A stretch of 64,000 nt of DNA from IMG/VR virus record IMGVR_UViG_3300042922_000542, positions 124,001 through 188,000 of that record, one strand, 5' to 3'. The position numbers and the translations under genes are program-made. Under the pieces are notes generated by a model. The model saw only the letters and a list, made by a program, of their open reading frames with translations, made no database searches and was not told the DNA's origin. How positions within the stretch are numbered: the first letter of the stretch is position 1; each line of letters starts with the position of its first letter. Shown here piece after piece: positions 19,901-48,085 of this stretch.

Positions 19901-20290
19901 TTATATGGATAGTAATATAGTTAATGGATCCCTCTCATCTTTATGAATTTCATTAAGCCTAAAATTATATTCTGTTCGACCTGCCTTAAATTCCTCAAGT
20001 TTTATTTGTGATTTTTCAGCTGCTTCTTTATAACTATTGGCATGTACATAAATAGTCTTCATATGATCGCGGTGATCACAAAATCCATCACAATAGTTAT
20101 GAGTTATTTCGGTAAAGAAAATCATAGGTTGTTCTAATTCCATATCTTCTTCAACTATATAGTACTCAATCGTTCCATGTATTAACCTAACTGGAGAAAT
20201 ACATTCTTTACTTTCAGCCTCGACAAACTTGGTTGATAAGTATAATTTTCTAGATTTATCATGAAATATGTCTATTTTATATCTTGGCAT
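19901..20290 (-). CDS. hypothetical protein
   Basis: 129 aa overlapping the upstream gene end. Confidence 0.65.
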   Translation of the reverse strand: MPRYKIDIFHDKSRKLYLSTKFVEAESKECISPVRLIHGTIEYYIVEEDMELEQPMIFFTEITHNYCDGFCDHRDHMKTIYVHANSYKEAAEKSQIKLEEFKAGRTEYNFRLNEIHKDERDPLTILLSI

Positions 20291-21699
20291 ATTACCACCG
20301 TCCTATCACATTTTTGTTTAGCAACTAGAATTGGAATGTTTAGAATATTTGCTAAAATTATTAGGTCACCATTCATAACATACTCTTTATCATTAATATT
20401 AATATTGCTAAAATATTCACTAAGATCAATAAATGATAATTCATTTATTATTTTATCATTAATATATTCATTTTCATCATTTAGACATCTAGTGCGTTTC
20501 CAATAATTTTTCATTTTATATAATTTATCATCAGTTACGTCTTTTACATTTGGCATATAATCACTCAACTCAAATACCATTGCCGATGCAATGGTATTAA
20601 ATTCAACCTCAGCATACATCCACTTTTCTGCAATATCCGCACCTACAAATTCATCAACGATATTACATTCCAGAATACGCCCGTTTGGTAGCATGTATTT
20701 ATATCTAGTTTTTGTGATTAATGGTTTACTAATAAAGAATTTCAAATATTCATATAACATTTTACCAATAGATATTTCTAACTCTGCTCTTGAAATAGTT
20801 CCATCTGATTTACCTGTTATAAAATACTCAGGTCCGGCGTCAATTGACGTCACCTTTCTAATTCGAATTTCATTATCAAATGATTCCAAATAACCCTGTT
20901 CGATATTACATTTTGATATACATTTTAAATTGTCAGGGAGTGATTCTATCAAATATTTCTTTTCAATTTCTTTGTCAAAAACAGTTATTGGTGTACAATT
21001 ATAGATCATATCTATAGATCCATCAATAATATTATCTGATTTTTCAGGTTGATTTACATTAGATGTAGGGCGCCATGAAGTCACTAGCTTATATATATTG
21101 CCATTATTTTTTACATGAACTGCCGCATCTAAATATTTATCTATCTTTTCAACCCATTCATTGAATCCTAGTTCAGACATTGCATGTAATAATATATTGG
21201 CACTATTCTTACCAAAGTTTCTCATAGCTAATAAATCATATGCACTTAATCTAAGAAGATCTTGAATATATTTGACATGACCACGCATTAAACTGTTACG
21301 TGTCAATGTTGGTAGATTCAAAATGGATATACTGGATCTCATCAATTCATATTGTGTAGGTTGATCAATGAGTTTAGTGATATTACTTAAATGATAATTT
21401 AATAGACGGATTACCTTAGACTTAATTTGGCTAACTCTTGTAGATGTTCTATCAATTATTAAAGCAATTTCATTTGAATTATGTCGATCGTTTCCGTCTA
21501 AACCGTAATAAAGGTTTATTACACGTTGCTGTATTTCTGTTAATTTTTTAATGCCATCCATTAATACTAATGAAAGTTCTTCAGATTTATTATATTTTGA
21601 TAATAAATCTTTCAATGTATTTGGATCTTTTTTGAATATATCTTGTAACAATTTTCTTTCACGTTCATTAACGTTGTCAATACTTATACAATGTCCCAT
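20272..21699 (-). CDS. fusion protein: sigma70 region-4 HTH + RNAP alpha-CTD-like domain + CYTH (triphosphate tunnel) domain
   Basis: LTEIQQRVINLYYGL..NEIA..TRVSQIKSKVIRLL (sigma4); ISILNLPTLTRNSL..IQDLL..LLAMRNFGKNS (alphaCTD); EIEKKYL..IEQGYL..IRIRK..TGK..RAELE..KTRY..AEVEF..DVT (CYTH). Confidence 0.85.
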   Translation of the reverse strand: MGHCISIDNVNERERKLLQDIFKKDPNTLKDLLSKYNKSEELSLVLMDGIKKLTEIQQRVINLYYGLDGNDRHNSNEIALIIDRTSTRVSQIKSKVIRLLNYHLSNITKLIDQPTQYELMRSSISILNLPTLTRNSLMRGHVKYIQDLLRLSAYDLLAMRNFGKNSANILLHAMSELGFNEWVEKIDKYLDAAVHVKNNGNIYKLVTSWRPTSNVNQPEKSDNIIDGSIDMIYNCTPITVFDKEIEKKYLIESLPDNLKCISKCNIEQGYLESFDNEIRIRKVTSIDAGPEYFITGKSDGTISRAELEISIGKMLYEYLKFFISKPLITKTRYKYMLPNGRILECNIVDEFVGADIAEKWMYAEVEFNTIASAMVFELSDYMPNVKDVTDDKLYKMKNYWKRTRCLNDENEYINDKIINELSFIDLSEYFSNININDKEYVMNGDLIILANILNIPILVAKQKCDRTVVICQDIK

Positions 21700-34012: not shown

Positions 34013-36154
34013 ATGTACGTTCTACCACATATACGAACAATACATGACTGTGAGAGGGAGTTTGGGGATGTTATAATCATTTCTCATTATAATACCTATG
34101 AAAAATTTGATGAATTATATTGGAAAGTATATTATGCAATTTGCGCATGTTATGAAATTTCAGAGTGCGTTAAATATAAAATACGTTTCAAATTTTACGA
34201 TTCCGATAGTAAGACCTATGAGCTATCTATGGTTAAATTTCTTTTAAATATAAACGCATGGAGACCACTAATTGAATTATATCAATTGCAAAAATATTAT
34301 CATTATAAATTAGAAGTATTGGATGAAAGCTTCATCATTAACAGAATGATGAGTGATACATTAAGAATAGGATTGGAATCTAAAGTATTGAAGACATTAG
34401 ATGATTATGGTATCTCATTTGAAAGATCATCTGATCTAATAAAGACTGTTATCGAAAGATATCAAGAGATATCGATCGAGTTTTCGTTGTTAGCTCCAGC
34501 CGGAATATTTACTCTTGAGAATTGTTTCCTAAACGATTATATGAATAATGAAAAGATTCGAGAGTTAAATAATACTGTAATATCACAAAATATTCAAACT
34601 GCCGATGTTGAGGAATTATTAAAAGAGAAGTATAATGAGCTTGTCGTAGAGTTAGGTAAAACTAAGAACCCGATATGGTATGTTAGTAAAGCAGGTAATC
34701 ACATCAAAGCTAAACAGGTACAAGAATTATTTATTTCGTACGGTCAGGTTCCGAATGTTGATGGTAATGTAATTCCTTATACGATGGAAGGTAATGGATT
34801 CAGTACTGGGTTTAATAGCCCATCTGCATATTATGTTGCCGCAACTGGTGCTAGATTATCGGCTATCATGAATAAAACTAAAATGGGTGAAGCGGGTTAT
34901 CTATCTCGTAATTTAATTTTATTGAGTAGAACAATGCATCTCTCTACAACTACATTTGATTGTGGTACTAAACACATGCTTGAATTATTTGTATCAAGTT
35001 CAACTATGTTGAGGAGATTGGAGAATCGTTGGTTTTGTGAATATTTGGGGGATCCATTACAATGCATTCATTATGAAACCCATAAACATTTAATTGGTAA
35101 GAAAATTTATGTGAGGTCTTTGTTAACATGTGCAGGTGGTGATGAGGTATGTCATGTATGTTACGGACGAGATAGTCACCTTGTTGCAAATATGCCAGGT
35201 ATGGCAATATTTAATACGGAAGTTTATTCAGAACCAGTATCGCAAAATATATTATCCACTAAACATTTATTGTTTACAGCCGCCAATAAATTGACATTCA
35301 GCGATTCGTTTGATAAATATTTTAAATTTAATGCAGGGGATATTTATTTGAAGGATCAAGATGAATGGAATAATGAGTTACCATTTGAATATTTAAGCAT
35401 AAGAATTGAAGAAAGCAATGTGCTATCCGTTAATGAACAGGATATAATTGAATATAGTACATTCGGTAATAATATAGAATCCCCATTCTTTATATATAAT
35501 AAAAAGACCGGCGAATATGATAAAATAGAAATAATAAATGCTGAATCCATGTTTATAGATGCGACATCTATGAAATTATTCAAAACAGTTATTGATAAGA
35601 AGCATGCGAATAGTAAGTTTTATGAACTTCCGCTACATACAATAGCTACTGAATTAGAGGGTCGTTTAATGTCAGTTGATATTAAAAATAATGGATTAAC
35701 CGATAACCTCTATATGATAATGGACTTATTAAATAAAAATGCATCTAAATATGATGATTATAATCAACTTGCACAATACTTCTTTGAAATGTTAATTAAT
35801 GTTGGAATCCGTTGCAGAAATATTCAAGCAGAAATTATATTAAATCGATTGATACGCGATAATAATGATATATATGCTAGACCTGATTTTTCTAAATTCA
35901 AAGCGCCTGAATATAAAATATTGACATTGAATCAAGCATTGATAAATACCAAAGCACCTACAATAGGTTTATCATATCAAGAAATCAAACGTCAATTACT
36001 CAGCGATGATCTTTATGCCAGTAAGAATGGAGCATCATATTTAGATCCTATGTATGCGACATCAATCAGTACTGATCGTTTAAAAGAAATACATAATAAG
36101 TTAAGAAATAAATTAAAGGAGAAAAAGGAAAATGAGCAATCAGAACATAAATAA
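34013..36154 (+). CDS. rpoC: non-virion RNAP beta'-C subunit (AR9 gp154 / phiKZ gp74-like)
   Basis: KQVQELFISYG..P, GARLSAIMNK..GEAGYLSR (bridge helix), DCG, LTC..VCHVCYG Zn site, EPVSQNILSTKHLL (trigger loop). Confidence 0.92.
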   Translation: MYVLPHIRTIHDCEREFGDVIIISHYNTYEKFDELYWKVYYAICACYEISECVKYKIRFKFYDSDSKTYELSMVKFLLNINAWRPLIELYQLQKYYHYKLEVLDESFIINRMMSDTLRIGLESKVLKTLDDYGISFERSSDLIKTVIERYQEISIEFSLLAPAGIFTLENCFLNDYMNNEKIRELNNTVISQNIQTADVEELLKEKYNELVVELGKTKNPIWYVSKAGNHIKAKQVQELFISYGQVPNVDGNVIPYTMEGNGFSTGFNSPSAYYVAATGARLSAIMNKTKMGEAGYLSRNLILLSRTMHLSTTTFDCGTKHMLELFVSSSTMLRRLENRWFCEYLGDPLQCIHYETHKHLIGKKIYVRSLLTCAGGDEVCHVCYGRDSHLVANMPGMAIFNTEVYSEPVSQNILSTKHLLFTAANKLTFSDSFDKYFKFNAGDIYLKDQDEWNNELPFEYLSIRIEESNVLSVNEQDIIEYSTFGNNIESPFFIYNKKTGEYDKIEIINAESMFIDATSMKLFKTVIDKKHANSKFYELPLHTIATELEGRLMSVDIKNNGLTDNLYMIMDLLNKNASKYDDYNQLAQYFFEMLINVGIRCRNIQAEIILNRLIRDNNDIYARPDFSKFKAPEYKILTLNQALINTKAPTIGLSYQEIKRQLLSDDLYASKNGASYLDPMYATSISTDRLKEIHNKLRNKLKEKKENEQSEHK

Positions 36155-36617
36155 TTCAAATATATCAATATTGAATCAACATGCTTTTGAAGAGGCTGCA
36201 GTAGAAATTAAGCAATTGCAAGATAAGATCGATGACAAATTAAAGGAAAAATGCCCAGATGAATTAGAATCTCATGAGAATTTATTATTTAAAGAAATCA
36301 GCTCTACTATAATTAAAATACTCACAGACACTTCTACTCAAGAGGCATTCAGAGAGTTGCAGAATAAAATAGGAACTGATATTTCGAAGGAATTAGTTGA
36401 ACTGATCTCAACTGTAACAACATTTGCAACATATAATGCAATTGCATTTTATGATATGACTGTTAAAGAACAAATTTCAGAAAATTTTACAGAGTGGGGA
36501 AAAACTATTATGAAACATGATAGTGATATAAATGTCATGGCTGCTAAAATTGGAGATATCGAAAAGAAATCAATTGTTTCTAAATTGCAAAATATTGTTG
36601 ATAATGATGTAATATAG
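36132..36617 (+). CDS. hypothetical helical protein
   Basis: 161 aa overlapping the beta'-C stop. Confidence 0.65.
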   Translation: MSNQNINNSNISILNQHAFEEAAVEIKQLQDKIDDKLKEKCPDELESHENLLFKEISSTIIKILTDTSTQEAFRELQNKIGTDISKELVELISTVTTFATYNAIAFYDMTVKEQISENFTEWGKTIMKHDSDINVMAAKIGDIEKKSIVSKLQNIVDNDVI

Positions 36618-36647: not shown

Positions 36648-36684
36648 ATATGAGAGGGGATGGGCGGCCATCCTCCTTCATATT
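36648..36684 (+). terminator. intrinsic terminator
   Basis: AATATGA.GAGGGGATGG-gcgg-CCATCCTCCT.TCATATT then T-rich run. Confidence 0.7.
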
Positions 36685-36698
36685 CTTATTTTTTTATT

Positions 36699-36708
36699 TA
36701 TATATTAT
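36699..36708 (+). promoter_or_regulatory. early-type promoter motif TATATATTAT upstream of ppk1
   Basis: Recurrent motif immediately after a terminator. Confidence 0.6.
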
Positions 36709-36753
36709 AATTATATAATAATTGAATAACAAAATAAAGTGAGGGTTTATGAT

Positions 36754-38571
36754 ATGTCAAAAATATCTGCAATTAAAAGTCTTATTATGTTTAATCAAAG
36801 AGTCTTATCACTAGGCGAAGTAATAGATGGTAAAACATATACAATGAATGAATTAAAAAAGACATTATCATTCAATCAAATATTCATTAATAATATGAAT
36901 GAAATTTTCAAAAATCAGAAGAAGTTCACTGAGTGCATTGATGAGTATAATGCCGACCTAAAGAAAGTTCATTTAAATTTATATAACATTATTAACAAAA
37001 TAATGGAGATTGATAAATCGATCATGATAGAGTTGGATGACAGATATCAGTTCGAATGTAGATTTGCAATATTGGATTTTATTAAGAATGGACTGATGAT
37101 TGATGTTATTAATAAAACTGAATTAGAAACATACCATTTTGATGAAGGTTTAATCTATTATATAATATCCGCGGGCAGTAGTTATATCATTTATCATATG
37201 GATTCTAAATGCAAATTATATCAATGCTTAATATCATATAAATTTAATGATTATATTAGATATTGGAAAACTGATGCAGCGATGTTATCATATCTTAAAA
37301 ATAATCACAAAGATGATAGTAATGATATATATGGAATTGTAATGAAAGTTACGAAATCATCAGACAGCCATGATCTGGTTAAGGTCGACATGTATGGAGA
37401 AACCGATGATATGCAGTCAATATATAATGATATGGTGACACATTCAAATTGGCATGATAAGTTCATTATAAAAAATCAATTCATGTATATGAGTGATATT
37501 GAACAAATCATTACATCGTCTAAGCTATATCAAAATATACCCGCCCATACTAATGTATTTGCATCAGATAATGATAAAGAATCGTTCTTACTATCAGATA
37601 TATTTGATAAAGATATATTAGTTGAATACCCTAATGATTCATTTGATTCATATTTACGATTATTACATCTTGCATCAATCGATAATAGGGTTGAATCGAT
37701 ATCCGTAACATTATATAGAATAGGTAATAATCCTATTATATATTATATTCTTAGAGACGCTGTAAGGAGAGGTGTTCAAGTGCATGTAAATTTAGAACTT
37801 AGAGCATCTGAAGAAAAGATTAATAAATTCTGGGCAAGTGAGATGAAGGCAGTTGGTATAGATGTGGCGCATTATGCGGATGGATATTTAAAGGTCCATT
37901 GCAAATTGACATTAATAAAATTCAAAGATAATAAAATGATAGCCCAGATCGGTACGGGTAATTATCATTCTCAAACCACATCGCAATATACAGATTTTTC
38001 ACTCATGACTACAGATAAAAAAATGACGTCACAAATATCAGATCTATTTGATGTTATATTTAATAGAGCGACAAAAGTTAAATTTAATAAAGACTTATTG
38101 GTCACTCAATATAATATGAGGGATACTCTTAAAGAGCTAATATTGAATCAAACAAATCTAGGTCCTAAAGGGTTAATTCAAATTAAATGCAATGCTCTTG
38201 ATGACGACGAAATGATAAAATATTTGGATTCAGCTGCATTAGCTGGATGTAAGATGCAATTAATAATAAGAGGTGTATGCACATGGATTCCACCTGAAAA
38301 TACACTTAATAAAAATGTGACAATCAAATCTATAGTATGGGATAAATTGGAACATTCCAGGGTATACTGTTTTGGAAATATTAACCCTAATGTATATTTA
38401 GGATCGCTAGACTTAATAACACGAAAATTAGATAATCGAATCGAAACATTGGTTCGAATAACTAATAAACATACACTAGTTGAGTTATGCAATTATATGA
38501 CTAGATATAATAATTTTAGCGGGGCTTGGAGTATGATTTATGATGGTGGAAATATTAAATATGTAAAATAA
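36754..38571 (+). CDS. ppk1: polyphosphate kinase 1
   Basis: MFNQRVL, F..IF.NNMNEIF, DILVEYP.DSF, TLYR, ELRA, LKVHCKL (phospho-His site), IGTGNY, YTDFSL, IKCNAL, IIRGVC, LEHSRVY, SLDLITRKLDNRIE; GAGGG RBS supports ATG 36754. Confidence 0.92.
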   Translation: MSKISAIKSLIMFNQRVLSLGEVIDGKTYTMNELKKTLSFNQIFINNMNEIFKNQKKFTECIDEYNADLKKVHLNLYNIINKIMEIDKSIMIELDDRYQFECRFAILDFIKNGLMIDVINKTELETYHFDEGLIYYIISAGSSYIIYHMDSKCKLYQCLISYKFNDYIRYWKTDAAMLSYLKNNHKDDSNDIYGIVMKVTKSSDSHDLVKVDMYGETDDMQSIYNDMVTHSNWHDKFIIKNQFMYMSDIEQIITSSKLYQNIPAHTNVFASDNDKESFLLSDIFDKDILVEYPNDSFDSYLRLLHLASIDNRVESISVTLYRIGNNPIIYYILRDAVRRGVQVHVNLELRASEEKINKFWASEMKAVGIDVAHYADGYLKVHCKLTLIKFKDNKMIAQIGTGNYHSQTTSQYTDFSLMTTDKKMTSQISDLFDVIFNRATKVKFNKDLLVTQYNMRDTLKELILNQTNLGPKGLIQIKCNALDDDEMIKYLDSAALAGCKMQLIIRGVCTWIPPENTLNKNVTIKSIVWDKLEHSRVYCFGNINPNVYLGSLDLITRKLDNRIETLVRITNKHTLVELCNYMTRYNNFSGAWSMIYDGGNIKYVK

Positions 38572-38578
38572 CTGAGAG

Positions 38579-39304
38579 GTGACGTTAATGTATACTCCTA
38601 ATATGAGTATTTGGTTAAATCCTAATTTAGAATATCTATTCAATACAGAGATAATCGAATATGATATGAAGGAAGCAGGATTTAGCTTAATAAAGCAATT
38701 TCATTTATTATCTGACGATGAAATTCATAAATTAAATATGATTGAAAAGTCTGAAAGGACGATAGCTATTGGCAAACTGCAACGTGATAAGATTTTATCA
38801 AGTTCTGCATTATCTGATAAATTCACAGAAATGCGAGCTGCATTTATCGAAGCTAATAAAATAACAGATAATGATATTATATCTGTTAAAAAAGATGCTA
38901 TATTTACTATAGGTAAATGTAAAAGGCAGAAATTTGGCGGTATTGAATTTGTAGAAAAGCATAATTATTCATCATATATTAGATTTGTGAATAATTCTAA
39001 TATTGAAATATTTTATAATGATGGGGATGGTTTAGAAATAAAAGGTATTGGTGATATAGGAATTAATAGACACAGATTGTACTTAATCCCATTCCTTGAA
39101 AAAATAATTAAATATATTGAGTTAAAGAATCCATCGGTAAAACGACAGATTAGAACATTTATAGATGATTATAAGGCTATGAAATTGGATGAGGGGTACT
39201 ATATTGAATTCAATAATAAGAGTGCATCAGTAGATCCGATGTACAATTATCAGAAATTATTAATACCCCTAGTTCAATTAGTTGTGGAGGAACTTAACAA
39301 ATGA
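38579..39304 (+). CDS. minimal palm-domain DNA-polymerase-like protein
   Basis: IIEYDMKEAGFS (motif A-like Asp), ISVKKDAIF (motif C-like Asp), LEIKGIG (PolB KG-like); only 241 aa. Confidence 0.55.
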   Translation: MTLMYTPNMSIWLNPNLEYLFNTEIIEYDMKEAGFSLIKQFHLLSDDEIHKLNMIEKSERTIAIGKLQRDKILSSSALSDKFTEMRAAFIEANKITDNDIISVKKDAIFTIGKCKRQKFGGIEFVEKHNYSSYIRFVNNSNIEIFYNDGDGLEIKGIGDIGINRHRLYLIPFLEKIIKYIELKNPSVKRQIRTFIDDYKAMKLDEGYYIEFNNKSASVDPMYNYQKLLIPLVQLVVEELNK

Positions 39305-39948
39305 AATATGATGATGCAGAAGATCAAGTATATTATCTTGTATATAAAACATCCGATGATCGACATGGTGGAATCGAGGATCTATATGGATGGTCACATA
39401 GTAAATCAGTTGTAAATGCATTTCTGAAGCAACGGAATCCAAAAAAATATGTTATTGATAAAATGGTAATAACTGCAGACAAAAGTGGGGCATATAGTAA
39501 GAGAGGTTTAGTTGACACAAGATATCTAGATTTGAGTGATCCAATTATGTTAAATATACTCCCATTAAAATCATGCAACACTGGTGAAACCGTTAAATTA
39601 TTTACAACAAGTGATGAACAAATTAGGATAGTTAGCGACATCGATTCAATGTTTGATCAACTTAGATCATTTGACAGAGTCGAAGATACATCCATAGCTC
39701 ATCTCGTTAATATATATAAATCAATTAAACCAAAATATATTAATGCACTTGAATGGATTGGATATAACCCCACAGAGATATCATATTTATATGACACAGT
39801 GGATGATATATATAATGAAATAAACTTTGGTCAAGATTATATCGATGAATCTGATGATGAAATCGATAAAGGTGGATTGAATTTAATTAAGGCGATGTTT
39901 TATTCACTAGAGTCTGTAATTAAAGTTTTGAAGGATGAGTTGATTTAG
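39301..39948 (+). CDS. hypothetical protein, paralogue A
   Basis: ATGA overlap with the upstream stop; shares motifs with the next gene. Confidence 0.7.
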   Translation: MKYDDAEDQVYYLVYKTSDDRHGGIEDLYGWSHSKSVVNAFLKQRNPKKYVIDKMVITADKSGAYSKRGLVDTRYLDLSDPIMLNILPLKSCNTGETVKLFTTSDEQIRIVSDIDSMFDQLRSFDRVEDTSIAHLVNIYKSIKPKYINALEWIGYNPTEISYLYDTVDDIYNEINFGQDYIDESDDEIDKGGLNLIKAMFYSLESVIKVLKDELI

Positions 39949-39963
39949 GAGGATCAGGTAACT

Positions 39964-40488
39964 ATGAAGAATTATGAAAGAGAAGATAATGTCACATTCT
40001 ATTTCGTTTTGTCTAAACGTGCATCAGGCGGTAATGATATTAAAGCTTGGAGTGATGATAAATGCTGCGTAGAGTTTTATGTGAAATTTCACAATTGCCC
40101 AAATCATCATATACGCAAAGTTAGTAAAAAGATGAGAGATATATCATCAATACTAAATGAGAATCATAATGACGAGATTGAAATTATGAATATTATAACC
40201 AGGGATAAAAATAATCGACCTAAAATTATACAGATTCCAATGACTACAACAGAACGAAGTGTAGTTGATGATGCATCTAAAACATTCTGTTCTGCAATGG
40301 TTGATTATTCGGCATTAAATGATCATGTGGGTATATTAAAACCAAAATATCAAAAATCTTTAGAAAGAATTGGAATGATGGATATCATTCGTTCGACGAT
40401 ATATAATAAGTCTACAAAATTTATATCTGAAATTGAAATCGACCAACTGCGCCTACTAGCACGATTATTCAAAGGTGATTTCAATTAA
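39964..40488 (+). CDS. hypothetical protein, paralogue B
   Basis: GGAGG RBS; DIKAWS..K vs DLYGWS..K and LKPKYQKSLERIG vs IKPKYINALEWIG. Confidence 0.7.
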   Translation: MKNYEREDNVTFYFVLSKRASGGNDIKAWSDDKCCVEFYVKFHNCPNHHIRKVSKKMRDISSILNENHNDEIEIMNIITRDKNNRPKIIQIPMTTTERSVVDDASKTFCSAMVDYSALNDHVGILKPKYQKSLERIGMMDIIRSTIYNKSTKFISEIEIDQLRLLARLFKGDFN

Positions 40489-40491
40489 GAT

Positions 40492-40501
40492 TATATATTA
40501 T
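40492..40501 (+). promoter_or_regulatory. early-type promoter motif TATATATTAT upstream of the kinase
   Basis: Recurrent motif. Confidence 0.55.
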
Positions 40502-40544
40502 TGATATATAGTAATATGGAACAAAATATTATCGAGAGGAGATT

Positions 40545-41405
40545 GTGAATACATACATGCAGAAAGTATTAAGATCAACAATATGTGAATTATTTCCGTT
40601 TGATCTTCGTGTGGAGTTGGAATTATTATCAAAACGAAGAGATATATCTAATAAAGAAAAACAAACGGAATTATTTAACTTATTTAGAAAATATGATATA
40701 GAGGCAGTTCCTCTTGGACCCGGAACTAATCGTTATGCATTTAAATTGAATTCATATGCGATCAAGTTTGCAACCAATAATGACGGTAAGATAGATAATC
40801 TTAAAGAGTTTAAAATGGCTAAAAGATTATATCCCAACGTTATTAAAGTATATGAAGTAAGTATGAATGGAACAATTCTAGTTACAGAGTATATACAACC
40901 ATTTGAAAGTTTTTCAGAGATGTTGTCTCATGAGAAAGAAATCAAAAAAATATTAAGCGACATGTCATCAGTATATATGTTTGGTGATGTAGGGGTAATA
41001 GAAAAGAATTATGCCAATTGGGGTATTAGAATTGGAACGACCGAGCCAGTCTGTTTAGATTTTGCATATGTATATGATGTTAGCAGTGATATATTTATAT
41101 GCCATGCTTGTCATAATGATGCAATGTTATCATTAACATCTGACTTCGCTTCATTAAAATGTCCCAGTTGTGGTAAAGTTTATAAGTTCGAAGAGATTCG
41201 AAGAAGAATCGGTAATGATATACACAATCATGAAATCGGTGATTTAACAACAGAAGGATACGTATTAGAGACATCTAATGTGCCAGTAACATTAGATGAG
41301 AATCGAAGTCCGTATTTAAAGAAGAAAGCATCTAAAATTAAAAATAATGAAATAAAAGTAGTTATAACAGAAGAGCCAATCGACACCTTTATTATGCCAT
41401 CATAA
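40545..41405 (+). CDS. protein-kinase-like fold enzyme with C-terminal Zn-ribbon
   Basis: LGPGTNRYAF (Gly loop), YAIKFA (VAIK Lys), NLKEF (helix C Glu), GDV...NYANWG (catalytic D..N), LDFA (DFG-like), CHAC..CPSC. Confidence 0.8.
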   Translation: MNTYMQKVLRSTICELFPFDLRVELELLSKRRDISNKEKQTELFNLFRKYDIEAVPLGPGTNRYAFKLNSYAIKFATNNDGKIDNLKEFKMAKRLYPNVIKVYEVSMNGTILVTEYIQPFESFSEMLSHEKEIKKILSDMSSVYMFGDVGVIEKNYANWGIRIGTTEPVCLDFAYVYDVSSDIFICHACHNDAMLSLTSDFASLKCPSCGKVYKFEEIRRRIGNDIHNHEIGDLTTEGYVLETSNVPVTLDENRSPYLKKKASKIKNNEIKVVITEEPIDTFIMPS

Positions 41406-41448
41406 AATTATTTAATATATTAAATCAAAATCTTAGGAGGATTTATCC

Positions 41449-43410
41449 ATGGTAAACATTATTAGAAATCAAGGTACAGTGAAAGTTATTCAGCAGAATA
41501 ACAATACCCAACATGAAGACAATTTCGTATTACAGACACCTATTAAAGAAACTTTAGCTGTGCCTGTTACAAAATTTGTATTTGAGGGTGACATTGATAG
41601 TTCAATCGAATCGCAATCATATAATAATATTTCACAAAAATCAAATACTAACATCAATGCAAATGATAGATATGATGATTTCGTTTTAGCTAAACCTGGT
41701 AATGAACAATTAGTAGATGGGGTTACTAAGAAAACTATGAATTCCCAAGAACCTCATAAAATCAATAGATTTGATAATCCTGAAAGTATACCATCCATTG
41801 TAGATGTGACTAGATCGATATCAAAGATAGCTAACATGATTAGGGAATCATTAAAACGAAATGACGTTTATGGTAAAATAACTTATGACAAAATGAAAGA
41901 ATCTGAATTTTACTATAAATTGAGCAATCCTATCTGGAAAAGTTTATTGCAAATATGCAATATTGAACAACTACCAGGTGAGAATCAATTTAATATCCCA
42001 AAGGTAGATATGAATACACCTTATCTAGAAACTTGGAGATTTTTCGATAGGATGTATCATGATACAAGGGTTAGTTTCGACAAAGATCCTATTATAGCAA
42101 TCACTAATTATAAGAATATATTCCAGGTTAATGGCGGAATCACTAGTAAATTAATACCAGTACTATTTTCGAAAATAGGGGAAAAATTAAATGGTATATC
42201 ACCATCAGATCTAAATATTATAGTGAATAACATTGGTGGTGTATGGTGTTATCGTGACCCATCTTATATCGAATCCATTGGAGTCGACAGTCCAATGCCA
42301 CCACGCATGACACTGTTTGATCCATTTGCACATAATGATACTGATGAAGAATTCTCTATCGGTAATGAAGTGCAGGTGCATATTCCAATAGCACAGATGG
42401 ATAAAGTGAATAAAAATAATAATATATATCAAACTGATGATAATGATGATTACGAAGATGATTGCGATGATGAATCTGATTATGATGAGGATTGTGATGA
42501 TTATGACGACTGCTGCGATGAATATGAAGATGAGGATCATGATGATGAGGTATTAACTATCGATATACAGAATGATACAGATGTTAATGAAGCCATTATT
42601 TCTATATCAGCATGGAATGGTACTACAACGGCATTATATGAAGTATTAGAAGTTAAACCAGAAACTGAAGAATCATTAGATTGGTCTTGGTTACGTCATT
42701 TTATACCAAATGCTGTAATTGTTACAGAAGAACCAGATGCATATTTAGAATACAATGAAATGTTGGATTGTATTAGATTTGCACAGTTGGCAAAATCTAA
42801 AGATGTAACTGAAGAGCCGAATGATAGTGCTACGATAATAGGTTTATACTATATTGATGAAGAAGTTGAAAATATGGAAGATAACTTATTGCACACTATT
42901 GGTAATATCGTTGAGCAAAATATGTCGGTTGCACCAAATTTAAGCCATCTAGTAAGAACCCTTCAGATGGATAGATTAATAGTTGATGAAATATCACTTT
43001 TAAAATGCATTGGTCAAATTGATGATGATGATAATGGAAATTATGCTAATCCAGATGCCGATGAATGTGAAGACGAAGATGAAGAATATGAATCAACATT
43101 AGCATTTGCAGCTTCATTAATATCGGGCAATAATGACATGGAAGCACCAACGCCTACAGAAATTATTGAAGAAGATGATTATGAGGATGATAATCAAGAA
43201 GTGATGGAAGAACCAGATGCAGAAGCCGAGGTAAATGAAGAGATATATGAGGTATATGAAGAAGAGGAAGAAATAGTAGAGTCAGATACTTCTGATAATT
43301 GTGAAAATACAATCGGCGATTACATCCGTAATAAATATGGTGATGCGGATGGTCTAGTATTACAACCAATCGTAAAAGGTCGAAATAGTAAATATCAAGA
43401 CGTTGAGTAA
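41449..43410 (+). CDS. large, highly acidic protein
   Basis: 653 aa with DDYEDDCDDESDYDEDCDD and EEDDYEDD..EEEEE tracts; GGAGG RBS. Confidence 0.8.
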   Translation: MVNIIRNQGTVKVIQQNNNTQHEDNFVLQTPIKETLAVPVTKFVFEGDIDSSIESQSYNNISQKSNTNINANDRYDDFVLAKPGNEQLVDGVTKKTMNSQEPHKINRFDNPESIPSIVDVTRSISKIANMIRESLKRNDVYGKITYDKMKESEFYYKLSNPIWKSLLQICNIEQLPGENQFNIPKVDMNTPYLETWRFFDRMYHDTRVSFDKDPIIAITNYKNIFQVNGGITSKLIPVLFSKIGEKLNGISPSDLNIIVNNIGGVWCYRDPSYIESIGVDSPMPPRMTLFDPFAHNDTDEEFSIGNEVQVHIPIAQMDKVNKNNNIYQTDDNDDYEDDCDDESDYDEDCDDYDDCCDEYEDEDHDDEVLTIDIQNDTDVNEAIISISAWNGTTTALYEVLEVKPETEESLDWSWLRHFIPNAVIVTEEPDAYLEYNEMLDCIRFAQLAKSKDVTEEPNDSATIIGLYYIDEEVENMEDNLLHTIGNIVEQNMSVAPNLSHLVRTLQMDRLIVDEISLLKCIGQIDDDDNGNYANPDADECEDEDEEYESTLAFAASLISGNNDMEAPTPTEIIEEDDYEDDNQEVMEEPDAEAEVNEEIYEVYEEEEEIVESDTSDNCENTIGDYIRNKYGDADGLVLQPIVKGRNSKYQDVE

Positions 43411-43421
43411 AAACATTAATG

Positions 43422-43453
43422 TACACAGGGTTCTATTACCAGAACCCTGTGTA
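43422..43453 (+). terminator. intrinsic terminator
   Basis: TACACAGGGTTCT-attacc-AGAACCCTGTGTA followed by a T-rich run. Confidence 0.8.
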
Positions 43454-43489: not shown

Positions 43490-44152
43490 ATGTTATTTAG
43501 GATTAACCATGAAAACTTTATATATCATATGATTGATTATTTTACTAGAGAAGAAATAACAAATTTATCATATATGATAATAAGTGCTTCCATTCGTAAT
43601 CAAGGTACACAGCCAAACATTGTTAAATGTAATGATTTATATCCTTCTAGTGATGATGCAATATCGAATTATATTCAACTTGAGGATAAAAAATTATTTC
43701 ATAAAACATATTATAGGGAATTAAAGCAGACTGAAAATATAATATATCAGGCAATTATTGATCCTATATTGAAGCATCGACATAATATTGTATTAATATG
43801 TGCTGAGCGTGAAGATATGTATATTGACGTCCTATGCGACTTTTTAAAACAAGAATTCGCTTTAAAGACCGTCGATCTAAATAAATTATTCGATGAGGGT
43901 GAAACTGATATATTTGTTATAGATAAAACCGAAGTTAACAACAAATCCATAGAAATAAAACGTAATGCAGTGCGTGAAAGTATCAGAAGTAGAGAACAAA
44001 CCCCAGATGGTCGTGCACATTTATTGTCATTAATGGCAAAAGAAGATAAATTGAAGAAATTAAAATCACTCGGCATTAAAGTGGATAAATCAATGAAAGA
44101 TTCAGAATTAACTGAATTATTGAAAGATGAGTGGGTGGCATCTGGGGAATAG
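43490..44152 (+). CDS. hypothetical protein
   Basis: In-frame ATG after the terminator and AGGGG RBS; ORF-track start 43403 overlaps the terminator. Confidence 0.65.
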   Translation: MLFRINHENFIYHMIDYFTREEITNLSYMIISASIRNQGTQPNIVKCNDLYPSSDDAISNYIQLEDKKLFHKTYYRELKQTENIIYQAIIDPILKHRHNIVLICAEREDMYIDVLCDFLKQEFALKTVDLNKLFDEGETDIFVIDKTEVNNKSIEIKRNAVRESIRSREQTPDGRAHLLSLMAKEDKLKKLKSLGIKVDKSMKDSELTELLKDEWVASGE

Positions 44153-44268: not shown

Positions 44269-46125
44269 ATGATTACTGTAAATTCTAAAACAAATAAAAA
44301 CCCGTCATCAGGTGATGAAAATTTTAATGAATTTAAATTACCAGAAGCAATGCAAGTTAAAAATGATGGGCTTGAAAAAATGGATAAACATGCAGAGCAA
44401 ATTCAAAAGGATATTAAACCTGTGGGGGATTGGGCGGATTTATTGAATACAACAACCGACAGCGTTACCAATGCAATAAATTCTGCTACAACTGATCGTC
44501 GTTCAATTATAGCCAGAGCTAAAAATTCAATAATACAATTTCCAATATACATAGTTGACAATGTTAATATTAGTGCAGCTCATATAGTCGCTAAAGCATT
44601 TGAACGTGTATATGCTTCATTTGTACAAACGGTATTATCACAGTATCCGGTAGTAGACGAAAATTCTATAAATGACTTAGCATTTTTAAAACAATTCCAT
44701 ACAAATATAAGAGAATCTGCAAATTCATTATTCAATGAATATTATCAACCAATTGATGATTTTGATGAAATTATGCAGGAAAGTATATCTAATACAGTAT
44801 TATGCGAAGATGGTATTATGGCAAATTTCAATGTCGCTCCATGCACCAATAGTTATCTTATTGCCGAAAATGCAAGACTACTAAATGAGCCATTACAGGG
44901 ATTTGAAAATTACTTCATCGAAGCTAAAATGAATGATGCTGCTAACCTTAAGAAACTAGATTCTGATAGACAGGATGTTAGATCGACACATGATCCACAG
45001 GGTGATATAATAGCGGGTATGAACGAGCAAGATGTTCTTGCATTATTCGATCAGAAGGAACCCGTAGAACCGAAGGAACCTACAAAAAATACACTTCCTC
45101 CAGAACCCAAATTTTTTATTAGAGATGGTGAAGAGAAGTCAGAGGCTCAAATTAGACATGCTAAAGATCTTGCTGAATATAATGCAATTGTTGATGAAAA
45201 AATGGGTGAATATGAAGATGCGGTTATTGCCTATAAAGATGCATTAGAAAAGTATGGTGCTGATAAGGAAATATTCCTTCAAAGTATAAAAGATGGCGTA
45301 AAGGTTGTATATAATAAAGATGGTGCACCAGTATTATATAATAAGGAAAAAGATCAATTCTATGTTATTAAACCTGGCGTACACAAAATCACTACATCTT
45401 CACGACAAGTATCTGCTGAATTTAAAGCACCTGCTATGTTAAGAGACTCAGATATTAAAAAGATAAATGGTATGTTGCCATATACATTTGATGCTAGTTT
45501 TACAATAAAGAGTAAAACTACTCCTATCAACAATATAGTGCATTATATAATTGGAGTGAAGTCTGTTCTTCATCTAATTAAGGCGAATGATCTTAGTGAA
45601 GAACTTCAAGGTCTAGTTACCGGGGATATCAAGAATTTACAAAAGGTTCGTTATAAAACTGGCGAAATTGCATTCTGGAAAGATTACATATTCAGAAAAG
45701 GTGAACTTAAGAGAGATGCATCTAAACAATTAGATAGCGGCAAGAGATGGATAAATACTCTTAAACAATTATCGCAATATAATAAAGAATATGGTAGCTT
45801 ACTAGATAAACCTGCCTCTCTATTGGCCGGTGGAGATATTCCAATTCCTAATGCCACATTAATTTTAACACAACCTGTTGTACAAAAAATGAAAAATGAA
45901 ACTGGTATTAATTTGGAAGATGTTGCTATGGCTAAAAAATTAGCAAAAAATTTATTCTTGATATCGATTGTAATTCTTGACTCATCTGCAGGTAATATGA
46001 AAGTACTATTTACTGATACAAATAATGCCTGGGACATTCAATCGTTAGCATCTATAGAAACAGAAATTGCTAAGACTGATAATAGCAATTTGATAAAAGA
46101 GCTCAATCAGATTATAAATAAATAA
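44269..46125 (+). CDS. putative head/inner-head structural protein
   Basis: First gene of the operon containing the prohead protease; several hydrophobic-X-E-(S/A/D/N) sites. Confidence 0.5.
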   Translation: MITVNSKTNKNPSSGDENFNEFKLPEAMQVKNDGLEKMDKHAEQIQKDIKPVGDWADLLNTTTDSVTNAINSATTDRRSIIARAKNSIIQFPIYIVDNVNISAAHIVAKAFERVYASFVQTVLSQYPVVDENSINDLAFLKQFHTNIRESANSLFNEYYQPIDDFDEIMQESISNTVLCEDGIMANFNVAPCTNSYLIAENARLLNEPLQGFENYFIEAKMNDAANLKKLDSDRQDVRSTHDPQGDIIAGMNEQDVLALFDQKEPVEPKEPTKNTLPPEPKFFIRDGEEKSEAQIRHAKDLAEYNAIVDEKMGEYEDAVIAYKDALEKYGADKEIFLQSIKDGVKVVYNKDGAPVLYNKEKDQFYVIKPGVHKITTSSRQVSAEFKAPAMLRDSDIKKINGMLPYTFDASFTIKSKTTPINNIVHYIIGVKSVLHLIKANDLSEELQGLVTGDIKNLQKVRYKTGEIAFWKDYIFRKGELKRDASKQLDSGKRWINTLKQLSQYNKEYGSLLDKPASLLAGGDIPIPNATLILTQPVVQKMKNETGINLEDVAMAKKLAKNLFLISIVILDSSAGNMKVLFTDTNNAWDIQSLASIETEIAKTDNSNLIKELNQIINK

Positions 46126-47221: not shown

Positions 47222-48085
47222 ATGACAGGAAATTTATCAACTCTTTGTTATATAAGCGAGCAAACATCTTTCGCTGAAGATTACAAAGATTTTGGATATA
47301 AAGTACATGATCGTGGCAACCGATTCTTTTTAACATTCGATGCTACATTACAATCATTCGGTATAAAAAATCGTAATAAGAGAGTATATGAATCGGCTAA
47401 TATTTTAAATAGGATTGAACAAGATGATTTTATACAATCTATGCTAAAACAGCAATCATGGATAGGCGAGATCGATCATCCAGGATCAACAATTGAAGGA
47501 CAAGATTTAACTCAGAACCGTATTGGAAATCCTGATCCAAAAATGTCTTCTCATTTTATCAGAAAACCTTGGCTAGTCGGAAATTTATTGAAAGCTCCGA
47601 TTCAAACGGATTCTTCAAATGAGCATGGAATGAATATGGCAATCAAGATTGTCGATGGAAAGATAGTGCCAGCATTTAGTGCAAGGGTATTTGGTGAATT
47701 AATTAATAAATTGGGTGTTCCTACTGTTATCGTTAAAAGATTAATAACATATGATTGGGTAATGTACCCATCTCACCCAGAAGCACTCGCAGATATTAAA
47801 CCTGGTATATTAACTGAATCTACCAATATGATTGAGGGTGCTATGAATGGAACGATAATATTCATAAAAGAATTGGCGAAAATGGCCGCAAACAATTCTA
47901 AAGAAACTGAATGGTTGTGCGAATCATTCGGATTGACGATTGATAATATCATTGGTATTAATGATACTGGCGATTCTATTATTATTCAAGAAAATAAGAA
48001 TATATACGCCCAGCCGATATCTGATAAATTCATACGTGAAAAGACCAAAAATCAATTATCTGACTTTTTAGGAAGGAGAGTTTAA
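47222..48085 (+). CDS. prohead maturation protease, T4 gp21 / phiKZ gp175 type
   Basis: LQSF..KNRNKRVY, WIGEIDHP (His), PAFSAR (Ser), ITYDWV.YPS. Confidence 0.88.
   Translation: MTGNLSTLCYISEQTSFAEDYKDFGYKVHDRGNRFFLTFDATLQSFGIKNRNKRVYESANILNRIEQDDFIQSMLKQQSWIGEIDHPGSTIEGQDLTQNRIGNPDPKMSSHFIRKPWLVGNLLKAPIQTDSSNEHGMNMAIKIVDGKIVPAFSARVFGELINKLGVPTVIVKRLITYDWVMYPSHPEALADIKPGILTESTNMIEGAMNGTIIFIKELAKMAANNSKETEWLCESFGLTIDNIIGINDTGDSIIIQENKNIYAQPISDKFIREKTKNQLSDFLGRRV

What the first reader, a model, noticed from the sequence alone, without database searches (positions are those of the whole stretch)
36699..43453. Candidate undescribed system: early 'phosphate/polyanion' block (ppk1 - palm enzyme - paralogue pair - kinase - acidic scaffold)
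Seen: six contiguous co-oriented genes bounded by terminators at 36648 and 43422, with early motifs at 36699 and 40492 and no internal terminator that I could find. Three are phosphoryl- or nucleotidyl-transfer enzymes and one is a polyanion. A CYTH domain, a family known to co-occur with PPK in bacterial polyP operons, is encoded 15 kb away. Inference: a module that makes or uses polyP and phosphorylation to build a protective or replicative condensate, or to fuel nucleotide supply, as an alternative to a chimallin shell. The functional link is a hypothesis based on adjacency only.
Basis: inference. Interest (0 to 1): 0.7.

Follow-up and report, generated by a model that had tools for sequence, protein, structure and literature searches.

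The report
Early jumbo-phage genes, not one system
The six genes are real early genes of an uncultured AR9-like jumbo phage, but they are not one polyphosphate system. The polyphosphate-kinase-like gene is an optional add-on, and only the kinase and its very acidic partner are clearly one functional unit.

Summary
Six co-oriented ORFs (36739-43410) lie between two terminator-like hairpins. They are headed by two copies of an AR9-type early-promoter motif.

- a PPK1-superfamily enzyme;
- a 238-aa palm protein, which models confidently as a miniature family-B DNA polymerase domain;
- two distant paralogues;
- a RIO/Bud32-like protein kinase with a zinc ribbon;
- a 653-aa polyanion (net charge -98).

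No CYTH domain was found anywhere in the 246-kb genome.

- The PPK1-like gene sits here only in the closest clade. Two complete close relatives lack any PPK1.
- 13 more distant relatives carry a canonical PPK1 about 15-113 kb from the other genes.
- The paralogue pair is also restricted to the close clade.

What does stay linked across 31-57%-identical relatives is kinase + acidic tail, a further gene (43490-44152) and the mini-polymerase. The kinase and the acidic tail are one fused ORF in many relatives.

The window's PPK1 belongs to a phage-only derived clade with active-site changes, and it scores below the PPK1 equivalog cut-off.

Overall this is a mosaic of uncharacterised early genes. 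It is of moderate interest, mainly for the mini-PolB family and the kinase-polyanion pair.

The parts
36656..36675 (+). Terminator-like G+C-rich hairpin after the upstream gene (36132-36617). It marks the left border of the block.
   Evidence: Consensus scan, 8-pair stem with 5 G-C pairs followed by a T-rich tail. Sequence read.
36698..36708 (+). Early-promoter-like motif TTATATATTAT, with an A 7 bases downstream. It heads unit 1.
   Evidence: Same core as the annotated and experimentally mapped AR9 early promoter. Enriched in the window. Concentrated in non-coding DNA upstream of co-oriented genes genome-wide.
36754..38571 (+). Derived PPK1-superfamily phosphotransferase. 605 aa from ATG 36754; the ORF opens at GTG 36739.
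   Evidence: - Pfam PP_kinase_C_1 (1e-38) and PP_kinase_C (1e-32), but no N or middle domain hit.
- E. coli PPK 1xdo E 6e-44 over the C-terminal half.
- TIGR03705 scores 254 bits against a cut-off of 466.
- It belongs to a phage-only clade of 86 proteins. All keep KxHxK and LEHxR, have Q at the E. coli His454 position, and have ASGE in place of ARFDE.
- The clade has SH-aLRT support of 100.
38588..39304 (+). Mini family-B DNA-polymerase-like protein (238 aa; phrog_21037). It has palm, fingers and thumb only, with no exonuclease or N-terminal domain.
   Evidence: - AF2 model pLDDT 96.5.
- Z about 10 over 214-220 residues to the polymerase domains of E. coli Pol II, KOD, RB69 and Pol alpha, and to HSV UL8.
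- TM 0.68-0.73 to PF00136 clusters.
- Invariant EYD26, K54..G62 and KKD103A.
- Homologues occur in all cultured AR9/PBS1/S6/phiR1-37-type phages.
- The family has 1,219 50%-identity representatives; the best 150 are 190-277 aa.
39301..39948 (+). Small protein of unknown function (215 aa), paralogue A. Its start overlaps the stop of the mini-polymerase gene (ATGA).
   Evidence: ORF and overlap. Conserved only in the close clade (13 of 69 sources). Profile-profile match to the next gene. No Pfam, PHROG, NCBIfam, PDB or Atlas lead.
39964..40488 (+). Small protein of unknown function (174 aa), paralogue B.
   Evidence: hhalign against paralogue A gives probability 94.9%, E 4.2e-8 over 119 columns. 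Restricted to the close clade. No family hit.
40491..40501 (+). Second early-promoter-like motif TTATATATTAT, with an A 7 bases downstream. It heads unit 2.
40545..41405 (+). Protein-kinase-like enzyme (RIO/Bud32-like core) with a C-terminal CxxC...CxxC zinc ribbon.
   Evidence: - AF2 model pLDDT 88.
- Foldseek hits to RIO2, PRPK, eukaryotic protein kinases and APH(2''). Atlas hits to RIO/Kdo/Pkinase clusters.
- Across 40 homologues the following are invariant or nearly so: G58xG60TNR, K74, E88, D148, N158, D172, and four Cys.
- No Pfam kinase hit.
41449..43410 (+). Polyanionic protein (653 aa, net charge -98). It is the detached C-terminal tail of the kinase.
   Evidence: - Charge profile.
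- It forms one fused ORF of 878-1003 aa with the kinase in many close relatives, and 506-971 aa in distant ones.
- Residues 123-523 align to residues ~472-891 of the fused proteins. In the window the two ORFs are in different frames, with several stops and a separate GGAGG site between them.
- Tails, or the ORF that follows the kinase, are acidic throughout: -52 to -113 in close relatives and mostly -28 to -90 in distant ones.
43422..43453 (.). Long perfect hairpin, terminator-like on both strands. It marks the right border of unit 2.
   Evidence: Scan: 13-14 pairs. It lies between stop 43410 and the probable start 43490 of the next gene.
43490..44152 (+). It travels with the kinase and the mini-polymerase in relatives.
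   Evidence: Found in 42 of 69 sources. In distant relatives the order is kinase-(tail)-this gene-mini-polymerase. No informative family or fold lead.

Best explanation
The block is a stretch of early genes in the conserved, collinear core of an uncultured 246-kb jumbo phage distantly related to AR9, PBS1, S6 and phiR1-37. It is read as two units from AR9-type early promoters, presumably by the virion RNA polymerase.

Unit 1 (36698 to about 40488) holds:
- a lineage-specific, optional PPK1-derived phosphotransferase;
- a widely conserved miniature family-B polymerase;
- two clade-specific paralogous small proteins.

Unit 2 (40491 to 43453) encodes one functional entity in two pieces: a RIO/Bud32-like kinase with a zinc ribbon, and its polyanionic tail.

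Shown:
- gene identities at fold or domain level;
- the kinase-tail fusion;
- the conserved linkage of kinase/tail, the gene at 43490-44152 and the mini-polymerase;
- the patchy and unlinked distribution of PPK1.

Inferred (none of this was tested):
- The PPK1-like enzyme acts as an auxiliary gene. It interconverts polyP and nucleoside triphosphates through its retained phospho-histidine, most plausibly tapping host polyP to support the NTP/dNTP demand of a large genome.
- The mini-polymerase works in phage DNA replication or repair. It is either an active exonuclease-less polymerase or a UL8-like scaffold.
- The kinase with its DNA-like acidic tail is an early host-takeover effector, comparable in logic to T7 gp0.7.

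There is no evidence that the six products act together.
For: - Phage identity: RNAP beta' fragment upstream, 27% identical to AR9/PBS1. The record is complete with direct terminal repeats.
- Promoter motif.
- Tight gene packing in two units and no internal terminator-like site.
- PPK1 distribution: next to the block in 8 of 12 close loci and 10 of 69 sources. None in two complete close relatives. A canonical four-domain PPK1 lies elsewhere in 13 of 32 related genomes.
- PPK1 phylogeny: the derived clade is monophyletic, and the canonical phage copies are scattered among cellular ones.
- Mini-PolB fold and family size.
- The main replicase is a separate gene (PF20286, window 7602-9629).
- Kinase fold and catalytic signature.
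- Fusion or fission of kinase and tail, and conserved acidity.
- Linkage of kinase family (53), the 43490 gene (42) and mini-PolB (67) among 69 sources, despite a changed gene order.
Against: - No transcript data exist for this phage; no RNA run was listed. 'Early' and 'two units' therefore rest on motif analogy with AR9.
- Conserved linkage of kinase, the 43490 gene and mini-PolB could be plain synteny. Neighbouring families such as RNAP subunits are also collinear.
- The PPK1-like enzyme has substitutions at two positions that are conserved in most cellular PPK1s (Q for His454, S for the Arg of ARFDE). It is below the equivalog cut-off. Its substrate may therefore not be polyP at all.
- In the close clade the PPK1-like gene always sits directly before the mini-polymerase. 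AR9, some Staphylococcus phages and two metagenomic lineages have a guanylate kinase in that place. This leaves room for a nucleotide-supply link between those two genes.
- The complex prediction for kinase plus tail gave no answer.
Confidence: 0.65

Rival explanations
1. All six genes form one system that makes or uses polyphosphate and phosphorylation to build a protective or replicative condensate with the polyanion as scaffold. It would be an alternative to a chimallin shell.
For: Adjacency, co-orientation and shared early motifs. Three phosphoryl- or nucleotidyl-transfer folds plus a polyanion are confirmed. The PPK1-like gene keeps the same position in every close relative that has it.
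Against: - PPK1 is missing from complete close relatives that keep the other genes.
- It is unlinked, at about 15-113 kb, and of a different type in 13 distant relatives.
- It is absent from 18 of 32 related genomes.
- The paralogue pair is clade-restricted.
- No CYTH was found.
- The whole 31-48 kb region is collinear, so adjacency is not informative.
- Nothing addresses condensates.
Confidence: 0.06
2. A narrower nucleotide-supply and replication link. The PPK1-like enzyme regenerates NTPs or dNTPs from polyP for the adjacent mini-polymerase. It would fill the role that a guanylate kinase fills next to the same gene in AR9-like phages. The kinase/tail unit is unrelated.
For: - Guanylate kinase sits directly upstream of the mini-PolB homologue in AR9 and Machias, and in L076/L077 and L089.
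- The window genome has no homologue of that guanylate kinase.
- There is a 16-nt gap between the PPK1-like gene and the mini-PolB gene in one promoter unit.
- From general knowledge, not tested here: E. coli PPK1 can use polyP to phosphorylate NDPs.
Against: The mini-PolB family exists without any PPK1 or guanylate kinase neighbour in most loci. Close relatives lose PPK1 without a replacement at the site. Active-site changes make the substrate uncertain.
Confidence: 0.2
3. The PPK1-like protein is no longer a polyphosphate kinase. It would be a neo-functionalised PLD-superfamily phospho-histidine enzyme acting on another phosphorylated or nucleic-acid substrate.
For: - All 86 clade members have Q at the His454 position and ASGE for ARFDE. 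Canonical phage and most cellular PPK1s keep H and ARFDE.
- Pfam does not recognise the N and middle domains.
- Short forms of 370-470 aa lack the head domain.
- The clade sits on a long stem branch and scores below the TIGR03705 cut-off.
Against: - The nucleophilic His motif, the second His motif and many other C1/C2 residues are invariant.
- The N-terminal FNxRVL and FxSNxxE motifs of the PPK1 N domain are still visible.
- Seven of 34 cellular homologues also lack His at that position.
Confidence: 0.2

Closest known systems
Bacterial polyphosphate kinase 1 (E. coli PPK, PDB 1xdo; Pfam PF17941 + PF13090; TIGR03705)
   Same: The two PLD-like catalytic domains C1 and C2. The KxHxK motif carrying the autophosphorylated His and the LEHxR motif. 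Remnants of the N-domain motifs.
   Different: - 605 aa, with no Pfam-detectable N or middle (head) domain.
- Q instead of the His454-equivalent, and ASGE instead of ARFDE, in the whole phage clade.
- Below the equivalog score.
- Forms a phage-only clade.
- Other relatives of this phage carry ordinary four-domain PPK1 genes elsewhere in their genomes.
Family-B DNA polymerases (E. coli Pol II, RB69 gp43, KOD, Pol alpha) and the inactive PolB-like HSV-1 UL8
   Same: The whole 238-aa protein superposes on the palm-fingers-thumb polymerase domain (Z 9-10.7). An acidic residue ends the first long strand and another sits in a beta-hairpin turn. A K-8-G spacing in the fingers helix recalls motifs A, C and B.
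   Different: - About one third of the size of a family-B polymerase.
- No exonuclease or N-terminal domain.
- No sequence-level match to PF00136, to PDB chains or to the phage's own divergent PolB.
- Motif C reads KKDA rather than DTD.
- Whether it is active or a UL8-like pseudo-enzyme is unknown.
AR9 g239, PBS1 gene 130, phiR1-37 g276, Machias gp201 (phrog_21037, function unknown)
   Same: True sequence homologues of the mini-polymerase gene (25-34% identity). In AR9 the gene lies in a unit headed by an annotated early promoter.
   Different: In those phages the neighbours differ: guanylate kinase, RNase H or helicase, or an isolated gene with its own promoter and terminator in phiR1-37. They have no detectable homologue of the kinase.
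RIO/Bud32 (PRPK) atypical protein kinases; phage T7 gp0.7 as a functional analogue (the latter from general knowledge)
   Same: A compact protein-kinase-like fold with Gly-rich loop, beta3 Lys, alphaC Glu, catalytic Asp/Asn and DFG-like Asp. Like T7 gp0.7, it is an early phage kinase joined to a second, non-kinase part.
   Different: - No sequence-level family membership.
- Atypical Asp-to-Asn spacing.
- An added zinc ribbon.
- A 500-700-residue polyanionic tail that can be a separate gene.
- No homology to gp0.7 was tested or claimed.
AR9 early (virion RNA polymerase) promoters, AAATATATATTAT-(6N)-G
   Same: Ten of the thirteen consensus bases are identical. A purine stands at the same distance downstream. 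The motif lies in non-coding DNA before co-oriented genes.
   Different: The upstream bases differ (T rather than AAA), and the +1 purine is A rather than G. No transcription start sites have been mapped for this phage.

Membership tests
Polyphosphate kinase 1 (PPK1) | Catalytic C1 and C2 PLD-like domains | tested here: met
   PF17941 at 1.2e-38 and PF13090 at 1.2e-32, both above cut-off. 1xdo E 6e-44.
Polyphosphate kinase 1 (PPK1) | N-terminal (PF13089) and middle/head (PF02503) domains of the four-domain architecture | tested here: not met
   No hit in the window protein, nor in any of the 85 other clade members listed. Canonical phage copies L109 and L110 have all four domains. Only short N-domain-like motifs remain.
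Polyphosphate kinase 1 (PPK1) | Score above the curated equivalog cut-off (TIGR03705) | tested here: not met
   254 bits against a cut-off of 465.85.
Polyphosphate kinase 1 (PPK1) | Autophosphorylated His (E. coli His435) and second catalytic His (His592) | tested here: met
   KxHxK and LEHxR are present in all 86 clade members.
Polyphosphate kinase 1 (PPK1) | His454-equivalent and the ARFDE motif | tested here: not met
   Q in 86 of 86 clade members, with ASGE-type motif. H occurs in 27 of 34 cellular and 13 of 13 canonical phage copies. That these residues are functionally essential is recalled from the literature, not verified here.
Polyphosphate kinase 1 (PPK1) | PolyP synthesis from ATP, or ATP synthesis from polyP | not testable with these tools
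   Needs an enzyme assay.
Family-B DNA polymerase | Palm-fingers-thumb polymerase-domain fold | tested here: met
   Model pLDDT 96.5. Z 9-10.7 over 214-220 of 238 residues, with all top hits PolB or UL8. TM 0.68-0.73 to PF00136 clusters.
Family-B DNA polymerase | Catalytic Asp of motif A and of motif C; Lys of motif B | tested here: inconclusive
   Invariant D26 at a strand end, D103 in a hairpin turn and K54..G62 in a helix fit the expected places. No residue-level superposition was available.
Family-B DNA polymerase | N-terminal and 3'-5' exonuclease domains; sequence match to PF00136/PF03104 | tested here: not met
   The protein is 238 aa with no Pfam hit, no PDB sequence hit, and no similarity to the phage's own PF20286 polymerase.
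Protein-kinase-like superfamily (RIO/Bud32-like) | Bilobal kinase fold with Gly-rich loop, beta3 Lys, alphaC Glu, catalytic Asp/Asn and metal-binding Asp | tested here: met
   Model pLDDT 88. RIO2, PRPK, ePK and APH hits. G58xG60, K74, E88, D148, N158 and D172 are invariant or nearly so in 40 sequences.
Protein-kinase-like superfamily (RIO/Bud32-like) | Sequence membership of a curated kinase family (PF01163, PF00069, PF01636) | tested here: not met
   No Pfam, NCBIfam or PDB sequence hit to a kinase. Only the zinc ribbon is seen.
A multi-gene 'system' (operon-like functional module of all six genes) | Co-occurrence and linkage of all components across relatives beyond general synteny | tested here: not met
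   Counts among 69 sources: PPK1-like 10, paralogues 13 each, kinase/tail 53, mini-PolB 67. PPK1 is absent from, or 15-113 kb away in, related complete genomes.
A multi-gene 'system' (operon-like functional module of all six genes) | Gene fusion between components | tested here: met
   Met only for the kinase and acidic-protein pair. No other pair is ever fused.
CYTH triphosphatase partner of PPK | A PF01928 domain encoded in the genome | tested here: not met
   No candidate in 246,147 bases at E<=1. None in ten nearby ORFs.
AR9-type early (virion RNAP) promoter | Consensus motif with a purine start 7 nt downstream, upstream of co-oriented genes | tested here: met
AR9-type early (virion RNAP) promoter | Mapped early transcription start independent of protein synthesis | not testable with these tools
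   No RNA run was listed for this phage.

The most novel reading that the evidence does not exclude
The kinase-with-polyanionic-tail, the gene at 43490-44152 and the miniature family-B polymerase may form an undescribed early module of a large group of uncultured AR9-like jumbo phages. Two examples of how it could work: a primer-independent or uracil-tolerant mini-polymerase, or a UL8-like replisome scaffold, working with a kinase whose DNA-mimicking tail captures host nucleic-acid-binding proteins. In the window's clade this module would have recruited a re-tooled PPK1 whose altered active site serves a new phosphotransfer reaction.
Probability: 0.15. Interest if true: 0.7.

Novelty: new variant of a known kind. 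Interest (0 to 1): 0.42.

Why it matters
As a "polyphosphate system" the finding does not hold up, so it should not be carried forward as a new defence-like or condensate system. The check does expose three uncharacterised protein families, all phage-borne in every context examined, with confident fold assignments.

- A roughly 250-aa stand-alone family-B polymerase domain. It has more than 1,200 distinct representatives and is present in every cultured AR9/PBS1/S6/phiR1-37-type phage examined. A PolB domain of this size was not seen among the matches here.
- A RIO-like kinase whose long polyanionic tail is conserved in charge but not in sequence, and which is repeatedly fused and split.
- A derived PPK1 clade with changed active-site residues.

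PPK1 genes of one kind or another occur in about half of the related jumbo-phage genomes. This suggests that polyP or energy metabolism is a recurrent target of these phages. Each family can be tested by ordinary expression and assay, and in part in cultured relatives.

Tried and rejected
- Nucleotide search of the block against GenBank phages: no match.
- tblastn of the kinase and of the acidic protein against GenBank phages: no match. A kinase profile against AR9, phiR1-37 and Machias found only a zinc-finger hit in AR9 g250.
- Single-sequence scan of IMG/VR with the PPK1-like protein: nothing. Relatives were reached through the kinase and through a mini-PolB alignment instead.
- CYTH: not found.
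- Idea that the mini-polymerase is a fragment or paralogue of the phage's main polymerase: rejected. The main enzyme is a complete PF20286 protein and there is no profile similarity.
- Idea that a stand-alone DEDD exonuclease regularly accompanies the mini-polymerase: seen in only three related loci and absent from this genome.
- Guanylate kinase as a regular neighbour: only in AR9-proximal lineages.
- Atlas, PDB-profile, Pfam, PHROG and NCBIfam searches for the two paralogues, the acidic protein and the 43490 gene: no usable lead.
- Complex prediction of kinase plus acidic protein: 'no answer', so not used as evidence.
- Sequencing runs: one DNA run that is probably the source sample, and no RNA run listed.
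- A tree of mini-PolB plus kinase to time PPK1 gain and loss: the close clade is unresolved, so gain versus repeated loss is left open.
- The structural paper on E. coli PPK could not be read. The functional weight of His454 and the ARFDE Arg therefore rests on memory.
- Rfam and tRNA scans of the region: nothing.

Full report
**Context.** The window is bases 124001-188000 of a complete 246,147-bp IMG/VR virus record with direct terminal repeats and 30% G+C. The gene just upstream of the block (34013-36154) is a fragment of a multisubunit RNA polymerase beta' subunit. It is 25-27% identical to those of AR9, PBS1, phiR1-37 and the Staphylococcus S6-type phages. Downstream lie a virion protein (44269-46125) and a prohead protease (47222-48085). 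This is therefore an uncultured, distant member of the AR9-like jumbo phages. The only run that holds it is labelled soil metagenome. Some homologues are filed under a Ruminococcus MAG. The host is unknown.

**Observation.**
- Six co-oriented ORFs fill 36739-43410.
- Terminator-like hairpins stand at 36656-36675 and 43422-43453. The scan finds no other + strand terminator-like site between them.
- The motif TTATATATTAT stands at 36698 and 40491. The window has 7 copies against 1.77 expected, and no shuffle of 100 reaches 7.
- Genome-wide, 35 of 43 copies of the 10-mer fall in the ~12% of DNA that a crude gene call leaves non-coding. Of those, 22 have a co-oriented gene start within 150 nt. The base 7 nt downstream is A in 31 and G in 3 of the 35.
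- This matches the AR9 early promoter AAATATATATTAT-(6N)-G, which was mapped experimentally and is read by the virion RNA polymerase (PMC5312081; AR9 record features).
- Gene spacing gives two tight units: 16 nt, an ATGA overlap and 15 nt inside the first; a 56-nt gap carrying the second motif; and 43 nt with its own GGAGG site inside the second.
- A CYTH domain was not found anywhere in the genome.

**PPK1-like gene (36754-38571).**
- It has the two catalytic PLD-like domains of PPK1 and matches E. coli PPK over residues 288-573.
- It lacks Pfam-detectable N and head domains, and scores 254 bits against the 466-bit cut-off of the PPK1 equivalog model.
- A database search returns 85 further proteins at 34-57% identity with the same reduced Pfam pattern, on contigs up to 300 kb. 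After a sharp drop in score come ordinary four-domain cellular PPK1s, at no more than 38% identity over the C-terminal half.
- All 86 keep the KxHxK and LEHxR histidine motifs. All have Gln where E. coli has His454, and ASGE where cellular enzymes have ARFDE.
- In a tree of the C1+C2 region this derived group is a single clade (SH-aLRT 100) on a long stem.
- A shorter form without the head region also exists.

**Mini-polymerase (38588-39304).**
- It has no Pfam hit and belongs to phrog_21037, of unknown function.
- It has homologues in every cultured AR9/PBS1/S6/phiR1-37/LPJP1-type phage.
- With a 30-sequence alignment AlphaFold gives pLDDT 96.5.
- The whole protein superposes on the palm-fingers-thumb domain of family-B polymerases: E. 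coli Pol II 402-771, KOD 386-751, RB69 393-890 and Pol alpha. It also superposes on the PolB-like HSV UL8. Z is 9-10.7 over 214-220 residues. TM is 0.68-0.73 to PF00136 clusters of the ESM Atlas.
- Invariant residues sit where motifs A, B and C would be: EYD26 at a strand end, K54 and G62 eight residues apart in a helix, and KKD103A in a hairpin turn. This residue equivalence is inferred, not shown by superposition.
- It is not a piece of the replicase. A complete divergent PolB (PF20286) lies at 7602-9629 and shows no profile similarity.
- The family is large and uniformly small: 1,219 representatives at 50% identity, of which the best 150 are 190-277 aa.

**Paralogues (39301-39948, 39964-40488).** BLASTP is marginal. 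Profiles built from ten orthologues each align at 94.9% probability, E 4e-8. No function could be assigned.

**Kinase and tail (40545-41405, 41449-43410).**
- The 286-aa protein models at pLDDT 88 as a compact protein-kinase-like fold. It is closest to RIO2, PRPK/Bud32, eukaryotic kinases and APH(2'').
- Forty homologues keep a Gly-rich loop, Lys74, Glu88, Asp148, Asn158, Asp172 and a four-Cys zinc ribbon.
- The next protein has net charge -98.
- In many relatives the two are one ORF: 878-1003 aa in the close clade and 506-971 aa further out. Elsewhere they are split, as here.
- The window's two ORFs align to residues 1-283 and ~472-891 of the fused proteins. They lie in different frames separated by several stops, so the split is not a sequencing slip.
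- Tail sequence is poorly conserved (~20-30% identity), but its acidity is conserved nearly everywhere.
- This is the one functional link in the block that is supported by more than adjacency. A complex prediction gave no answer and is not used.

**Linkage in relatives.**
- In 12 loci from close relatives the whole stretch from 31.4 to 48 kb is collinear. The mini-polymerase, both paralogues and the kinase are in all 12. The PPK1-like gene is in 8, always between the same two genes.
- In those without it, the flanking genes abut. Two such genomes are complete (289 kb) and have no PPK1 anywhere.
- Among 68 unique loci found through the mini-polymerase, plus the window, the family counts are: mini-polymerase 67, kinase/tail 53, the gene at 43490-44152 42, RNAP beta' fragment 33, paralogues 13 each, PPK1-like 10.
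- In distant relatives the order is kinase-(tail)-43490 gene-mini-polymerase. The window's clade has rearranged this, yet the genes stay within 2 kb of each other.
- Of 32 related genomes over 200 kb, 14 have a PPK1. Thirteen of these are canonical four-domain enzymes that keep His454, and ARFDE where the motif pattern matched. By my subtraction of the coordinates, they lie about 15-113 kb from the mini-polymerase.
- In the tree the canonical copies fall in at least three places among cellular sequences.
- PPK1 is therefore a recurrent but optional and unlinked gene in this phage group.
- Cultured AR9-like phages lack the kinase. Several of them place a guanylate kinase before the mini-polymerase gene.

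**Interpretation.**
- The block is best read as two early transcription units in a conserved genome core, not as one system.
- Shown: folds and domains; the kinase-tail unity; the conserved linkage of three families; the patchy distribution of PPK1.
- Inferred: a polyP-to-NTP auxiliary role for the PPK1-like enzyme. The known NDP-kinase activity of E. coli PPK1 is recalled, not tested.
- Inferred: a replication or repair role for the mini-polymerase.
- Inferred: an early host-takeover role for the kinase with its DNA-like tail.
- The altered active site leaves open that the PPK1-like enzyme has a new substrate.
- The persistent linkage of kinase, 43490 gene and mini-polymerase may be function or plain synteny. 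I could not separate the two.

**Limits.**
- No transcript data, no host and no biochemical data are available.
- The gene calls in relatives come from a simple ORF finder.
- The tree of close relatives is unresolved.
- The cellular PPK1 sample in the tree is biased towards the best hits.
- Literature searches found no description of a phage mini-PolB or of jumbo-phage PPK1. The library is incomplete, however.

Noticed in passing
window 20272-21699 (-): A 475-aa protein combines a sigma-70 region 4 domain (PF04545, 2e-7) with an RNA polymerase alpha C-terminal domain (PF03118, 9e-9). This is an unusual pairing for a phage that brings its own multisubunit RNA polymerases.
   Followed up: no
window 37736-37746 (+): A third exact copy of the early-promoter motif, with an A 7 nt downstream, lies inside the PPK1-like gene. 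It overlaps codons for the conserved IIYYIL peptide. It may be a coding coincidence or an internal start for a C-terminal product.
   Followed up: partly
window 7602-9629 (-): The phage's main replicase is a full-length 'divergent family B DNA polymerase' (PF20286, 7e-41). Its polymerase motifs start near the N terminus, and no exonuclease domain was detected in the same ORF.
   Followed up: partly
G000:C1:244347-244670 (-), outside the window: A weak second match to the kinase profile (E 3e-4, profile positions 52-146) lies in a 483-aa ORF. It may be another kinase-like gene in the same genome.
   Followed up: no
L025:6644-8056 and proteins P0181, P0185, P0189, P0193, P0198-P0202: These are short forms (370-470 aa) of the derived PPK1-like protein. 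They keep the N-terminal motifs and C1+C2 but lack the ~190-residue head region.
   Followed up: partly
L109:6051-8060, L110:5862-7889 and L111-L121: Thirteen related jumbo-phage genomes carry canonical four-domain PPK1 genes in other neighbourhoods, for example next to a metallophosphoesterase and a DEAD-box helicase. They fall in at least three places in the tree, which suggests repeated acquisition.
   Followed up: partly
L042:8741-9406, L039:8746-9405, L043:8750-9406: In three related loci a stand-alone DEDD 3'-5' exonuclease (Rv2179c-like, 2e-7) directly follows the mini-polymerase gene. The window genome has no such gene.
   Followed up: yes
L014/L015 (= L031/L032) 8420-9422: One close relative has two extra ORFs (104 and 233 aa) inserted between the two paralogues. 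They could be a third paralogue.
   Followed up: no
G000:C1:54637-54750, outside the window: An AT-rich stretch holds five overlapping copies of the promoter 10-mer on both strands. It may be a divergent promoter cluster or a replication-origin-like region.
   Followed up: no
L001 (AR9 204647-206003), L003 (Machias 195574-196927), L076/L077 7057-7605, L089 7066-7737: A guanylate-kinase-like gene lies directly upstream of the mini-polymerase homologue in AR9-proximal lineages. The window genome has no homologue of it.
   Followed up: yes
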